From assembly GCA_001179505.1 (NCBI GenBank), contig CDMY01000228.1:1-64000 (forward strand): 64,000 bases of DNA, written 5' to 3'. A program made the position numbers and the translations under genes. The DNA is from Vitrella brassicaformis CCMP3155. Lineage: Eukaryota > Protista > Chromerida. Under the pieces are notes generated by a model, which searched no databases, had not been told where the DNA came from, and saw nothing but the letters and a program-made list of their open reading frames with translations. Shown in pieces: positions 29,754 through 49,879 of the stretch. The number at the start of each line of letters is the position of its first letter. Position 1 is the stretch's first letter.

Positions 29754-30941
29754 CTAGCTCACGCCACGCCCACCTGTGCTGGGGTGTGTGACTTCTGCCA
29801 CTGAGTAGAAGTCGCCATCCCCCTCGTCGGCCACATCCATCCCCTCCTCCATGCCCTCTAAGCCGTCTATGCCGTCTCCCTCCATCCCGAAGTCGCCCCA
29901 AGAATCGCCCTCATGGAGCATGGAATCATCGCGGGACGGCACCAGGCGATACGGACTCCTGCTGCCGCCATCATCGCGCTCAACGCCACCCCCCACACCA
30001 ACACCAGAACCTCCACCACGTGGGGGTGTGGGGGGGTGGTAGGTGTGTGGGATACCACGTTGGGAGTGGTGTCCTGGTATTGCAGCAGTCGCCGCAGCTG
30101 CATATGCCGATGCCGATGCTGGCCCAGCCGCAGCAGAGGATGTGCTCGCAGCAGTCGCAGCCGCAGCAGGCGCAGGAGGGCGCACTGGCCTGCCCGGTAA
30201 CACCACCGGCACCGGCATCGGTGGTGGCAACAAGACTGCTGGCGGTGGCAACGAAGGAGCCATCTGCACTGCAGCAGGGTGCACCGGCAGCCGATGCCGC
30301 AGCTGCACGGGCACAGGTGGAGGACCGATCGGGACGAACTGTGGCACCGGTGTCAGTGGGACGAATGGCGGATAGGGGGACGGGGCACGGGAAGGGGCGT
30401 GGGAGGCAGAGAGAGAGAGGGAGAGAGGGGGGAAAGGCCGATATGTCTGGGGCAGACGGGGACGGGGGGCATTCATGGCGGGCGAGAGGGGGGGCTGCAT
30501 CGCGCCGTAGTCGTGCTGCGCAGTCGAAACAGACAGCGGCGTACCTGACACACACACATGCAGACGCGAACAAGTGGACAACTTGTTAATGAGTGAGTCA
30601 CGCATAAAATGTCTGTCGTGCTGCTCACCGTTTGTGGTCGATATAGGAGTCGGTCCCGTGTGCCCATTGACGTGTGAGTTGCCCGTCGACACCATCCCGC
30701 TGGCAGGCGGACGCCCATTACCGCCACACGCGTACGTCGAGTGCTGTGGCGGCGGACGAGGGAGAGCCACGTGCTGCATCGGCGGTCCTGCAGCTGTGGG
30801 GGGGCCAAACGGGGGATTCCCACACACTGCTGGGGCGGGCGGACCCATTGCCGATGACCAACTTGAATGAGCAGAGTAGAAGCTCGATGCCGGTGGAGGT
30901 GGAGGTAGGTGCCGCCAAGAGGAGGGATCCATCATGAGCAC
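29754..30941 (-). CDS. Proline-rich low-complexity protein with an acidic C-terminus
   Basis: 395-aa ORF (MLMMDPSSWRHLPPPPP...) containing in-frame microsatellite segments that look like introns, and an acidic tail EGDSWGDFGMEGDG. No known domain. Confidence 0.5.
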   Translation of the reverse strand: MLMMDPSSWRHLPPPPPASSFYSAHSSWSSAMGPPAPAVCGNPPFGPPTAAGPPMQHVALPRPPPQHSTYACGGNGRPPASGMVSTGNSHVNGHTGPTPISTTNGEQHDRHFMRDSLINKLSTCSRLHVCVSGTPLSVSTAQHDYGAMQPPLSPAMNAPRPRLPQTYRPFPPLSLSLSASHAPSRAPSPYPPFVPLTPVPQFVPIGPPPVPVQLRHRLPVHPAAVQMAPSLPPPAVLLPPPMPVPVVLPGRPVRPPAPAAAATAASTSSAAAGPASASAYAAAATAAIPGHHSQRGIPHTYHPPTPPRGGGSGVGVGGGVERDDGGSRSPYRLVPSRDDSMLHEGDSWGDFGMEGDGIDGLEGMEEGMDVADEGDGDFYSVAEVTHPSTGGRGVS

Positions 30942-31090
30942 CGATTCTGATCATCAGGGGTCGTCCAGCGCTCCGTGCGATTGCGAGCTAAAGTGCGCCA
31001 GGGTCTGCGTGGCCATTAGCCAGGATGATTCAGTCGTTGGCAGGGCGGCGATGTGATGATGCGGATAAAATAGATGTCCAAGAAGTGGGA
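30881..31090. repeat. Diverged direct repeat, copy 1 (partner 36191-36412); contains the starts MxMMDPSSWRH (minus) and MSKKW (plus)
   Basis: agctcgatgccggtggaggtggaggt(a/g)ggtgccgccaagaggagggatccatcat...tagatgtccaagaagtggga aligns with 36191-36412 with small indels. Confidence 0.92.
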
Positions 31091-34589: not shown

Positions 34590-35588
34590 TTATCTCGATG
34601 TGTGTCTCCTCTTGATCGTGCGATCGTGGACGTTCGTACGTTTGGCTTTGCAGCAGCAGGGGAACATGCGCCGCGCTGCCTCCCGCGCCAGGCCCCGGCA
34701 GAAGCGGAGTGCATCCGCCACCCCATCCTTGTAAATCTCCCACCGCTCCTGGCAATCGGGACCCTCCAGGGTCACCCGATAGCCAGGTCCATGTCGCCGC
34801 CACCACTCGCCCTGCCCCGTCTTGGTGTTTGTGTACCACCCCTGAAGGGAAGAACACACACAATTGATTGACACAGAGATTGCACTTGTATGTATGGGCA
34901 GTGAGTGCACCTGCTCCGTCACACCCAGCCTCGCCGCTTCCTCCACGAAGTACCACTTGGGGTACTCGGGCGCACCGGGCCCAAACAGCGGGCGCTGCAG
35001 GCAGGCAGATAGGCAGGCGGACAGAGAAACACACTTGTTTCTTACAATGGATGTGTCCTGTTGTGGTGCTTTCGTACATCGAAGAACTTGTCGAAGAAGT
35101 CTTGCTCTGGGGGAGCTTTAGACGAGGCGGTGGAGTCCGGGCCCTGAATCCCCAAAGGACACGGAGGAGGACGAGAGTGAGGATCTGACCTCGGTGTCCC
35201 TGGATTTCTGCTCACCTCGTAGCCCATAGCCCCGTAGAGATAATTGTTGTCGTACATCCACCGCCTGCCCTCGTTCCCCACCACGCGATACGCCTCGTTG
35301 ATGGCCTGTGACTCCTTGGTAGAGGTGGCGGCGTGGGCGGGCTGGCCGTGCTGCTGCTGCTTGTCAGCGTGGCACCTCTACACACACACGGGGAGAGAGA
35401 GAGAGACGTCAACTCGTGGAGAGCTGCCTGCAAGTACTAGAGACGCTGCACTGACTGTCACAGTGACTGACCTGCAGGAGTGCGTCTCGTGCCTTCTTGA
35501 TGTCCGCCTGCGTGGCGGTCGGGGCGACCTCGAGGGTCGCATAGTACCCTTTGGGGTCGCCCATGCTGCTGCTTGTGGGTGCGGCCAT
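34590..35588 (-). CDS. J-domain-like (DnaJ) protein with HPD replaced by HAD; 3' end uncertain
   Basis: Spliced: MGDPKGYYATLEVAPTATQADIKKARDALLQ|RCHADK...SQAINEAYRVVGNEGRRWMYD, then GPDS..FFD|RPLFGP..TEQ|GWYTNTK... Confidence 0.7.
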
Positions 35589-35751: not shown

Positions 35752-35772
35752 ATATATATATATATATATATA
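35752..35772. repeat. (TA)n microsatellite abutting the foldback element
   Basis: atatatatatatatatatata ends 1 nt before the left arm; the only long TA run I saw in the window. Confidence 0.95.
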
Positions 35773-35773
35773 A

Positions 35774-36179
35774 CAAGGCAAGCGTCTTGGTGGTCCAAAA
35801 CTGGCTGCGAGCCACGAAAACCGACCTCTGATCCCAAAACCAGCTTTGCACAGTGCAAAACCGGTTTTGCGACAGAGAGAACCGGTTTGCGATAGAGAAA
35901 ACCGGTTTTGCTTGTTTTCAAAGCCCGGTTTTCCCTGTTTGAGTGCCGGTTTTCGAGCCACAGTTTTGTGGAGACATCTATTTGTGGTCGTGTCTCTACA
36001 AAATCGGCACTCAAACAGGGAAAACCGGGCTTTGAAAACAAGCAAAACCGGTTTTCTCTATCGCAAACCGGTTCTCTCTGTCGCAAAACCGGTTTTGCAC
36101 TGTGCAAAGCTGGTTTTGGGATCAGAGGTCGGTTTTCGTGGCTCGCAGCCAGTTTTGGACCACCAAGACGCTTGCCTTG
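35774..36179. mobile_element. 406-bp foldback / MITE-like element: 175-bp perfect inverted arms with phased internal AAAACCGGTTTT subrepeats
   Basis: 35774-35948 is the exact reverse complement of 36005-36179 (checked base by base). 56-nt spacer with an inner 13-bp stem (35964-35976 / 35991-36003, one G:T). AA dinucleotide on both sides. The inverted repeat is certain; mobility is inferred. Confidence 0.75.
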
Positions 36180-36190
36180 AACCGAGTTTG

Positions 36191-36412
36191 AGCTCGATGC
36201 CGGTGGAGGTGGAGGTGGGTGCCGCCAAGAGGAGGGATCCATCATCTGCACCGATTCTGATCATCAGGGGTCGTCCAGCGCTCCGTGCACGGCGGTGCGA
36301 TTGCGAGCTATGTACCAGGACCCAATGGCCAGTTACGGTGCCAGGATGATTCAGTCCGTTGGCAGGGCGGCGCTGTGATGATGCGAATGAGGTAGATGTC
36401 CAAGAAGTGGGA
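36191..36412. repeat. Diverged direct repeat, copy 2 (partner 30881-31090); candidate bidirectional promoter with the helicase ATG at 36396
   Basis: Aligns with 30881-31090; its left edge lies 11 nt from the end of the foldback element. Confidence 0.92.
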
Positions 36413-47885: not shown

Positions 47886-49879
47886 GGAAGGCATAAAATG
47901 CATTGAGACACGACAGCCTCTCTCAATGCACATGACATTATACCTCTCGGGTTGGCGGCTTTCGGTTTGGCTTTCGGCTTCGGCTTGGCCGCCTTGACAC
48001 ACACACGCACATCGATACAAGCAGCCGTCGGTCGTCTGCCTGAGCGTCATCATGTGTATCTGCCTCGCCTTTTGTTTGGGTGCTGGGGGTGCTGCTGCAG
48101 CAGCGGCAGGCGGCTTGCCGAGGTCACTCTTGGGGCCCTCGTCGATCCTGACAAAGCCGTGTGAACAGTGGCGAGGGAAGGAAGCAGACCCACGCCCACA
48201 CATGTGGTTTACTTGAGTATGTCAGCTACGATCTGTCTGAGTTGGGGCTCCAGCTGGGCCCTCGCCAACTCCGAAGCCACACCTCGCAATGCACCTTCAC
48301 ACACACACGACACAGATGAGCAGAGAGAGACAGGGAGGGTATGTCGTCCTAGGCAGCCCATTTGGCTAACTCGTGTTGATGTCGAATGTGTGTTCGCTCT
48401 GGGGGTCATCGCCGACGTCGTCGGCCGCAGACGCCACACTACTGCTGCACACCTCTGCACACACACACAGCAGAGAGAGAAAGAGACAAAGGAAGACGGG
48501 GGCTGTCTGTGTCTGTGTGTGTCCATCAAGCTGACCGTTGACGTAGAGGTTTTTGTCTTTGACCACCGCCATGATGCGATCCATCTGTGTCACACAGACA
48601 TTGACACACACCGCACATAAATCTGTGTGTGTGTGCCATTGCTGCTGACACACTTACTTTCTTCTGAATGAATTGGGCGAGTTTGTCATAGCTGAGCCGA
48701 ACCAACGGCACATCGTCACCATCAGGACCACCTGACACACACACACAGTGGGTGGATGGATGCCCCCCACCCCCTCCGCTCTCTCTGTCTTACCGGGGAT
48801 GGCGTCGCATATGAGTGCTATTCGGTGTCTGACGTCCTGTGTGCGCATCAGCTGCGCCATGACGGTGCGGCAGCCATTACCGCTCTCGTCAACGTAGTCA
48901 TAGCTATACCCCCCACCCCTGCCCTCCGCCGATCTGTCCGTCGGGCTGCCGCCCCCACCCTGTCCACTACTGCTGCTGCTGCCGACATCTTGGTGCTGCG
49001 ATGGGTGTGTGTGGCTGCTGCTGCTGCTGGCAGCCACGTTTGACGTGCGGTGGTCAGATGGCGGTGGGTCGAGTGTCTGTGTGAGGGGGCAATACCGACC
49101 GCTGCCCTGCTGACACACACACACACACAGGGAGGCTCCTATAGAGTTGCGTCGCTCCCTTACCTCTCCCCTGGCTCGTTTGCGCAGCGGAATGAACAGA
49201 AAGAGCGGATCGATGTGCGTCACCAAATGAAGCCGACCATCTGTGGGAACACACAACACACACATCCATCCATCAAGATGTGGCCCTCCCTCCCTGTCCC
49301 TCTGTGCGTACCAGCGATGAGTGTGTTGCCGACGAACATGGAGCACTCGCCCACCGCCCGGCGGCAGCTCACTACCTCCAGCACATCGACGGCAGCTGCT
49401 GCTGGGGTGTTGCCATCCCCATTCCCCCCTGTGTGCTGCTGTGGCTGGCGGATGACATACATGGCCGGTTTGCCGCAGCCGGGGTGCGGCAGACGCACCA
49501 CATGGTGGACCACACTCCCACCATCGCCGCCGCCATTGCCATGATTGTCGTCGATGAGGCAAACGCGGCATCGCTGCAGCACATCGGGATCTTCGTACGC
49601 CGCTGCTATAGGGGCTGCTACTGGCGTGTTGATGGCCGCACCGCCATGGGCATGGTGGCCTCCTCCTGCTGCTGCTGCCGGTGGTGGTGCCGGTGTGCTA
49701 CGGTTGGCTGCGGTGGTCAGATTGGGTGGCGGTGAGATGCAGATGTCAATGCCCTCGTGGGAAGGGCTGTGCATCATCATATCGGCCCTTTGCAGGCCCT
49801 GTCCGGGGCGGAGATTTACCACACTAAGCTCGCATTTCAGGAGGTGTGGGTACAGAGTCCAATCGTTGAGCTCATGCAT
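47793..49879 (-). CDS. RNASEH2B: Ribonuclease H2 subunit B
   Basis: VVRLPHPGCGKPAMYVI; SMFVGNTLIADGRLHLVTHIDPLFLFIP; LVRLSYDKLAQFIQKKM; C-terminal PIP-box-like GMKKMTDFFAKK*. True start may be the MMM near 49780. Confidence 0.85.

What the first reader, a model, noticed from the sequence alone, without database searches (positions are those of the whole stretch)
35774..36179. Perfect 175-bp-arm foldback element built of ~21-bp phased palindromic units
Seen: the arms 35774-35948 and 36005-36179 are 175/175 complementary, with a further 13-bp inner stem and 14-nt loop. Each arm carries 8 degenerate AAAACCGGTTTT-type units whose cores sit at 35801, 35821, 35840, 35861, 35882, 35902, 35925 and 35946 (spacing 19-23, mean ~21 nt, two helical turns). 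It is flanked by AA on both sides and by a (TA)n run on the left, and is A/T-tract rich in a GC-rich context. Known: foldback (FB-type) elements and some MITEs have long TIRs with modular transposase-binding subrepeats, and some MITEs associate with (TA)n. Inference: a recent or arm-homogenised non-autonomous DNA transposon. Its CAAGG terminus and possible 2-bp AA duplication match no superfamily I can assign. If transcribed it would form a ~175-bp perfect dsRNA.
Basis: partly seen in the sequence, partly recalled or inferred. Interest (0 to 1): 0.78.

Follow-up and report, generated by a model that had tools for sequence, protein, structure and literature searches.

The report
Foldback MITE of a CACTA-type transposon
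The perfect 406-base hairpin is a real, small, non-coding jumping gene of the alga Vitrella brassicaformis. It is a stripped-down relative of CACTA/EnSpm-type transposons that still exist in the same genome, so it is a useful annotation and not a new kind of element.

Summary
Window 35774-35948 and 36005-36179 are 175/175 complementary. There is an inner 13-bp stem and a 14-nt loop. AAAACYRG units recur every 19-21 bp, and AA flanks both ends.

The genome is Vitrella brassicaformis CCMP3155 (72,700,666 bp, 1064 scaffolds). The element is one of about 10 copies of a family. Four copies are full length. Four others end at assembly gaps or contig ends. Their flanks are unrelated and the target duplications are 2 bp. 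A related 571-bp element has an empty site that proves a 2-bp (CG) duplication.

The terminus CAAGGCAAGCG grades into CAATACAAGCG and CACTACAAGCG in sister families. In all five families read, the first AAAAC motif starts at base 24 from the end and then recurs every 20-21 bp.

A terminus that is 21/22 identical to this family lies about 575 bp from the 3' end of a transposase gene fragment (C481). An open copy of that gene (C401) aligns with Transposase_21 (CACTA/EnSpm Tnp2) proteins at hhalign probability 98%.

Verdict: a foldback MITE of the CMC (CACTA-Mirage-Chapaev) group, and a new member of a known kind. The perfect arms may partly reflect collapse in the short-read assembly. Other readers of this scan noted what look like related elements on other DNA of this genome (s1-221989, s1-201666). 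I did not check that they are the same family.

The parts
35752..35771 (.). (TA)n microsatellite next to the insertion site. It is target context, not part of the element.
   Evidence: Read directly. Absent at all other copies.
35772..35773 (.). Left copy of the 2-bp target-site duplication (AA)
   Evidence: AA on both sides. The 2-bp duplication is supported by other copies and by an empty site of a related element.
35774..35948 (+). Left arm (long terminal inverted repeat). The terminus is CAAGGCAAGCG. Forward AAAACYRG units start at 35797, 35817, 35836, 35857, 35878 and 35898. Reverse units start at 35925 and 35946.
   Evidence: 175/175 complementary to the right arm. Unit positions. The motif core is G-S-AAAACYGG.
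35949..36004 (.). Central 56-bp asymmetric region. It has an inner 13-bp stem (35964-35976 with 35991-36003) and a 14-nt loop (35977-35990).
   Evidence: Mismatch list. Centroid fold. The region is conserved in copies C758, C91c, C91a and C91b.
36005..36179 (-). Right arm, the exact reverse complement of the left arm, ending in CCTTG
36180..36181 (.). Right copy of the 2-bp target-site duplication (AA)

Best explanation
This is a non-autonomous 'foldback' MITE of a CACTA/EnSpm-like (CMC group) cut-and-paste transposon of Vitrella brassicaformis.

Shown:
- It is one of about 10 dispersed copies.
- It ends in CA...TG and is flanked by a 2-bp target duplication.
- It consists almost wholly of two long inverted ends.
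- Those ends carry a 10-bp motif (G-S-AAAACYGG) that starts at base 24 and recurs every 20-21 bp.
- The same layout is found in four sister families, including one with true CACTA termini.
- Coding relatives with the same kind of ends carry a DDE transposase homologous to Transposase_21, with an N-terminal C2H2 finger and an inserted PHD finger.

Inferred:
- The element arose by internal deletion of such a coding element, whose own inverted ends appear to be about 400 bp long.
- It is moved in trans by that transposase, which makes cuts staggered by 2 bp.
- The phased motifs are protein-binding sites lined up on one face of the helix (two turns apart). They would help pair the two ends, as TnpA does on the subterminal repeats of En/Spm.
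- The perfect arms of this copy come from copying one arm onto the other (hairpin-templated repair or gene conversion) or from a recent origin. Assembly collapse may contribute.
For: Family and termini:
- Whole-genome DNA search and an exact terminus scan found 15 family termini at about 10 loci, against 0 in the control.
- The flanks are unrelated.

Target duplications:
- AA/AA, CA/CA, TT/TT and one imperfect TT/TG in this family.
- CG/CG twice in the CACTA-ended family.
- Filled site C1048:4227-4797 against empty site C1019:114915/6 gives CG.

Phased motif:
- Three AAAACYRG motifs spaced about 21 bp apart gave 73 hits against 0 in the control, at 18 loci.
- The first motif is at +24 in all five families.

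Transposase link:
- The C481 terminus is 21/22 identical to this family.
- It lies about 575 bp beyond a fragment that is 83% identical in DNA to the 3' end of the C401 transposase gene.
- C401 has open frames of 470 and 395 aa and matches public protein P0001.
- Six of the eight distant relatives scanned that match its catalytic core carry PF02992 above the curated cut-off.
- BLASTP aligns both catalytic D residues with E = 9e-12. hhalign gives 98.2% probability and E = 2.8e-14.
- C(2)C (CYGC), H(3)H (HAYTH) and a following E can be read in the sequence, as described for the CMCT clade (PMC12730594).
- C739 joins a CACTACAAGCG terminus and motif arrays to a transposase C-terminal half.

Mirrored substitutions.
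Against: - No complete autonomous copy with both ends was read. The C401 contig starts before the right terminus, and its left part could not be fetched.
- C481 is only a 3' fragment.
- Mobilisation in trans, motif binding and the origin by deletion are inferences.
- The family terminus is CAAGG, not CACTA.
- Pfam does not recognise the Vitrella transposase directly. Homology rests on intermediate sequences and a profile comparison.
- Two elements lack matching 2-bp flanks (C739, C620).
- Copy number is low for a MITE.
Confidence: 0.8

Rival explanations
1. The foldback is real, but the perfect 175/175 identity is an assembly product. A de Bruijn assembler (velvet, k=75) merged two nearly identical arms into one sequence and wrote it out in both orientations.
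For: The assembly method is given in PMC4501334. Four other copies end exactly at 300-N gaps or contig ends inside the palindrome, so the assembler struggled with these elements. The mirrored private substitutions are what a collapse would produce.
Against: The same assembly resolved arms that differ at 5 positions (C758), or by several substitutions and a 20-bp deletion (C91c). The asymmetric 56-bp centre was assembled intact. The arms of this copy can differ by a few bases at most, so the biological reading does not change.
Confidence: 0.2
3. It is a host hairpin-RNA or small-RNA locus, or a regulatory palindrome in the divergent promoter, and not a mobile element.
For: It lies between two divergently oriented gene starts (J-domain gene ATG at 35588 on the minus strand, plus-strand ATG at 36396). 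If transcribed it would form long dsRNA.
Against: It is dispersed at unrelated loci with target duplications, and a related element has a filled and an empty site. I had no expression data.
Confidence: 0.03

Closest known systems
CMC / CMCT clade of DNA transposons (CACTA/EnSpm, Mirage, Chapaev; Kojima 2025, PMC12730594)
   Same: CA...TG termini, with true CACTA in the sister family. A target duplication within the 2-5 bp range. Subterminal repeats. A linked DDE transposase homologous to Transposase_21 with C(2)C and H(3)H motifs.
   Different: This family's terminus is CAAGG. The transposase is so diverged that Pfam misses it, and only 3 proteins out of 1.8 billion representatives match at E <= 1e-10. 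It carries a PHD finger inside the catalytic region.
En/Spm (maize CACTA) subterminal 12-bp TnpA-binding repeats (textbook knowledge, from memory)
   Same: Many short motifs in direct and inverted orientation fill the subterminal few hundred bp of both ends.
   Different: Here the motif is about 10 bp, strictly phased at 20-21 bp, and anchored at +24 from the end in five families. No TnpA-like second protein was identified.
Drosophila FB (foldback) elements and Galileo-type long-TIR elements (from memory)
   Same: Long inverted arms built of short internal repeats, little or no unique centre, and arms that can be homogenised.
   Different: As I recall, FB makes 9-bp duplications and has no sequence relation to this element. 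Here the duplication is 2 bp and the partner is a CMC transposase. The resemblance is in architecture only.
Emigrant MITE / Lemi1 (PMC1636448)
   Same: A MITE whose inverted repeats and subterminal repeated motifs are bound by the proteins of a related autonomous element. This is a model for mobilisation in trans.
   Different: That system is pogo-like (Tc1/mariner) with TA targets, a different superfamily.

Membership tests
CMC/CMCT DNA transposons (non-autonomous member) | 5'-CA...TG-3' termini | tested here: met
   CAAGG...CCTTG in all full copies. CACTACAAGCG in the sister family. The criterion is from PMC12730594.
CMC/CMCT DNA transposons (non-autonomous member) | Target-site duplication of 2-5 bp | tested here: met
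   2 bp: AA, CA and TT, with TT/TG imperfect. CG/CG twice. The empty site C1019 against the filled site C1048 gives CG.
CMC/CMCT DNA transposons (non-autonomous member) | [quoted passage not shown] | tested here: met
   hhalign 98.2%, E = 2.8e-14, against PF02992-bearing proteins. Both D residues align. CYGC, HAYTH and the E are read in the C401 frames. The gene fragment lies about 575 bp from a terminus 21/22 identical to this family.
CMC/CMCT DNA transposons (non-autonomous member) | The element is actually mobilised by that transposase | not testable with these tools
   This needs a transposition or excision assay.
Canonical plant-type CACTA/EnSpm | CACTA termini and 3-bp duplication | tested here: not met
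   This family ends in CAAGG and the duplication is 2 bp.
Mirage lineage of CMC | 2-bp duplication, and the transposase groups with Mirage in a phylogeny | tested here: inconclusive
   The 2-bp duplication is met. No phylogeny with Mirage reference transposases was possible because I held no reference sequences.
Drosophila FB family | 9-bp duplication (from memory) and FB-type arms | tested here: not met
   The duplication is 2 bp. I made no sequence comparison with FB elements, so the difference rests on the 9-bp figure recalled from memory.
Tc1/mariner-derived (Stowaway-like) MITEs | TA target duplication | tested here: not met
   The duplications are AA, CA, TT and CG.
MITE (descriptive class) | Short, non-coding, terminal inverted repeats, target duplication, several near-identical copies | tested here: met
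   406 bp, made up of the two inverted arms and a 56-bp centre. The only ORFs listed across it run through the repeat arms and I treat them as spurious. Copies are 85-98% identical. Copy number is low, at about 10.

The most novel reading that the evidence does not exclude
The strict layout (first G-S-AAAACYGG site at +24, then one every two helical turns, switching orientation deeper in the arm) is kept in five families whose spacer sequences, and in one family the termini, have diverged. This layout may be the assembly code of a deeply divergent, PHD-bearing, RAG1-related CMC transposase lineage that may be confined to chromerids. The mirrored substitutions in this copy would then show that foldback arms are actively re-copied from one another.
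Probability: 0.3. Interest if true: 0.55.

Novelty: new member of a known kind. Interest (0 to 1): 0.4.

Why it matters
The genome paper left the DNA transposons of Vitrella essentially unclassified. It reports 0.17 Mb of Class II sequence, most of it without a superfamily. This work ties a foldback MITE family and four sister families to a CMC-type transposase, and gives exact ends and a 2-bp duplication proven by an empty site. That helps repeat masking and gene-model curation in a key relative of apicomplexan parasites. The elements also break the short-read assembly, which explains several gaps. The phased motif arrays offer a simple system for asking how CACTA/RAG1-related transposases recognise and pair their ends.

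Tried and rejected
- Pfam searches of the whole genome with PF02992 (Transposase_21) and PF12940 (RAG1) found nothing. The tool warned that nothing rang in its control genomes either, so these blanks carry no weight.
- Direct Pfam scans of the Vitrella transposase frames gave only weak zinc-finger and PHD hits.
- ORFs inside the C620, C275 and C22 elements showed no transposase.
- No empty-site paralogue of the window locus exists. Only the right flank is duplicated.
- No left end for the C481 element was found within 15 kb.
- The (TA)n association was rejected because it occurs at one copy only.
- Searching earlier scan notes by sequence gave nothing.
- I did not scan the viral, metagenome or prokaryote collections, because they cannot hold this eukaryote's relatives.

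Full report
**1. The observation**

Window 35774-35948 and 36005-36179 are complementary at 175 of 175 positions. The repeat finder extends the pairing to 189 nt at 97%.

Folded as single-stranded DNA, the 406 nt reach -257 kcal/mol, against -61 +/- 5 for shuffled sequences (z = -39). The centroid structure shows a further 13-bp stem (35964-35976 with 35991-36003) and a 14-nt loop.

Units of the type AAAACYRG start at arm positions 24, 44, 63, 84, 105 and 125 in the forward direction. Reverse units start at 152 and 173.

AA flanks both ends and a (TA)n run touches the left end.

**2. The organism and its assembly**

The window's genome has 72,700,666 bases in 1064 contigs. These are exactly the figures published for Vitrella brassicaformis CCMP3155 (PMC4501334).

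The assembly was made from short reads with velvet at k=75, followed by scaffolding and gap closing. This matters for the claim of perfect arms (section 8).

**3. It is a dispersed family**

A DNA search of the whole genome found three more full copies:
- C758:833-1238, 96% identical
- C91:187433-187818, 92%
- C705:2296-2660, 85%, with an internal deletion

It also found partial copies that stop at 300-N gaps or contig ends inside the palindrome: C91:182772, C91:186370, C91:194631 and C206:167189. A 100-bp left end lies at C351:317.

A scan for the 22-bp terminus with up to 3 mismatches gave 17 hits, against 0 for the reversed control. Fifteen of these belong to the family or its close relatives.

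The flanks of the copies are unrelated. Four insertions lie within 12 kb at the end of contig C91.

**4. Ends and target duplication**

All copies begin with CAAGGCAAGCG and end with its complement.

The two bases outside the ends are AA/AA (window), CA/CA (C758), TT/TG (C91c) and TT/TT (C705, whose first base is lost).

A related 571-bp element at C1048:4227-4797 has a matching empty site on C1019 at 114915/6. The filled site reads ACCG-element-CG-TGG and the empty site reads ACCG-TGG. This proves a 2-bp duplication.

The six bases next to the insertion sites are 62% A+T, against 42% in the window. That is a mild preference for A/T-rich targets. The (TA)n run occurs only at the window copy.

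**5. Sister families share one layout**

A pattern of three AAAACYRG motifs spaced 11-16 bases apart gave 73 hits in the genome, against 0 for the control. The hits include loci that do not belong to this family.

Four other groups emerged:
- the C1048/C481 type, with termini CAATACAAGCG and CAAGGCAAGCGTG
- a family with true CACTA ends (CACTACAAGCGG) at C138, C471, C556, C491, C739, C704 and C1040
- a CACCACCAGG-ended family at C620, C275 and C626
- an array at C22

The CACTA-ended copies at C138 and C471 have about 400-bp inverted ends and CG/CG duplications.

In all five terminal types that could be read, the first AAAAC starts at base 24 from the end. Further motifs follow at 20-21 bp or multiples of that spacing. 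The sequence between the motifs differs between families. Over 89 units, only G-S-AAAACYGG is conserved.

A conserved anchor and a spacing of two helical turns, kept through sequence divergence, argue for a functional constraint. The most plausible constraint is protein binding.

**6. The transposase**

Inside the C739 element, next to the right-hand motif array, lies a 379-aa open frame with a PHD-like start and the motif KLHAYAHLP...FGP...W.F.SE.

Used as a query against the genome, it found relatives at C401, C790 and C481. It also found small remnants beside motif arrays at C491, C704, C1040 and C275.

C401 carries two open frames of 470 and 395 aa on one strand. They match a 733-aa public protein, P0001.

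An exhaustive HMMER search of 1.8 billion representatives found only 3 proteins at E <= 1e-10. Eight weaker hits cover the catalytic core, and six of those eight pass the Pfam cut-off for PF02992, Transposase_21.

BLASTP aligns both catalytic aspartates and the CxxC motif with one of these proteins, at E = 9e-12. A profile-profile comparison gives 98.2% probability and E = 2.8e-14 over 215 columns. The protein atlas also pointed to Plavaka and Transposase_21.

The motifs C(2)C (CYGC), H(3)H (HAYTH) and a following E are present. These are described for the CMCT clade, together with CA..TG ends and 2-5 bp duplications (PMC12730594).

P0001 also has an N-terminal C2H2 finger (weak hit) and a PHD finger above the Pfam cut-off (E = 1.7e-7).

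**7. The link to this family**

The right end of the C481 element is 21/22 identical to the terminus of the window family. Its arm is 72-82% similar to the family's arms.

About 575 bp inside that end, C481:26610-27195 is 83% identical in DNA to the 3' end of the C401 transposase gene. It is about 86% identical in protein.

The left arm of C1048 matches the reverse complement of the C481 right arm over about 420 bp. The coding elements therefore seem to have long inverted ends themselves. An internal deletion would leave exactly a foldback.

I could not read the left part of the C401 element, or anything beyond the contig start at its right.

**8. The perfect arms**

Against the family consensus, the window copy has three substitutions (arm positions 23, 59 and 106). 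All three are present in both arms.

The arms of C758 differ at 5 positions. Those of C91c differ by several substitutions and a 20-bp deletion.

Independent mutation would not mirror three changes. Either one arm was copied onto the other (gene conversion, or repair templated by the hairpin), or the copy is a recent product of a symmetrical source, or the assembler collapsed two nearly identical arms. The last possibility cannot be excluded without reads.

**9. Setting in the window**

The element lies between two divergent gene starts. One is a J-domain gene whose ATG is at 35588 on the minus strand. The other is a plus-strand gene starting at 36396. It therefore sits in a shared promoter region of a very compact genome.

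**10. Verdict**

This is a real foldback MITE of a CMC-type transposon lineage. The duplication is 2 bp and the terminus CAAGG is a variant of CACTA.

It is not a member of the Drosophila FB family, and it is not a Tc1/mariner-type MITE.

It is a new member of a known kind. The strictly phased, terminus-anchored motif arrays and the very divergent PHD-bearing transposase are its most interesting features.

Binding of the motifs, mobilisation in trans and the deletion origin are inferences.

Noticed in passing
window 30868-31090 versus 36178-36412: The 235 bp to the right of the element (promoter plus the first 6 codons, MSKKW..) are duplicated 5 kb upstream at 83% identity. The homology starts within a few bp (at most about 35 bp) of the element's right end. 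This could be coincidence, or a break at the transposon end could have seeded the duplication. It is the subject of note s1-205840.
   Followed up: partly
G000 C91:182772-194818 (L016, L023): Four insertions of the family lie within 12 kb at a contig end. Two are cut by 300-N gaps and one by the contig end. This suggests local hopping or a transposon-rich region, and it shows that these palindromes break the assembly.
   Followed up: partly
L037 (C401:179-2857, minus strand); protein P0001: The CMC-type transposase appears open, with 470 and 395 aa frames separated by an intron inside a PHD finger. The public 733-aa gene model seems to splice out the stretch that holds the third catalytic residue (SEMMH...).
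   Followed up: partly
L021 (C1048) versus L025 (C1019:114728-117999): Contig C1048 (5.1 kb) is a permuted near-duplicate of part of C1019. It is either an alternative haplotype or a collapsed tandem repeat. The two differ by the 571-bp element and by a 9-bp duplication (TATCATGCG) near the site.
   Followed up: partly
L034 (C491:47755-49834): A nested wreck. A fragment of the C401-type transposase (88% aa identity, 48686-49045) is followed by a CACTA-ended foldback (49102-49702). After that comes a remnant of the other transposase lineage.
   Followed up: partly
L022 (C481:25400-25760): Upstream of the transposase fragment, a frame resembles a retroelement protein (..FDVCVTDADAPSY..FTPLVVTVDG..). 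It probably truncates the DNA transposon.
   Followed up: no
L030 (C138:100373-101484): A 1.1-kb CACTA-ended element has 404-bp arms (92% identical) that are each themselves a foldback of motif arrays, so it is a palindrome of palindromes.
   Followed up: partly
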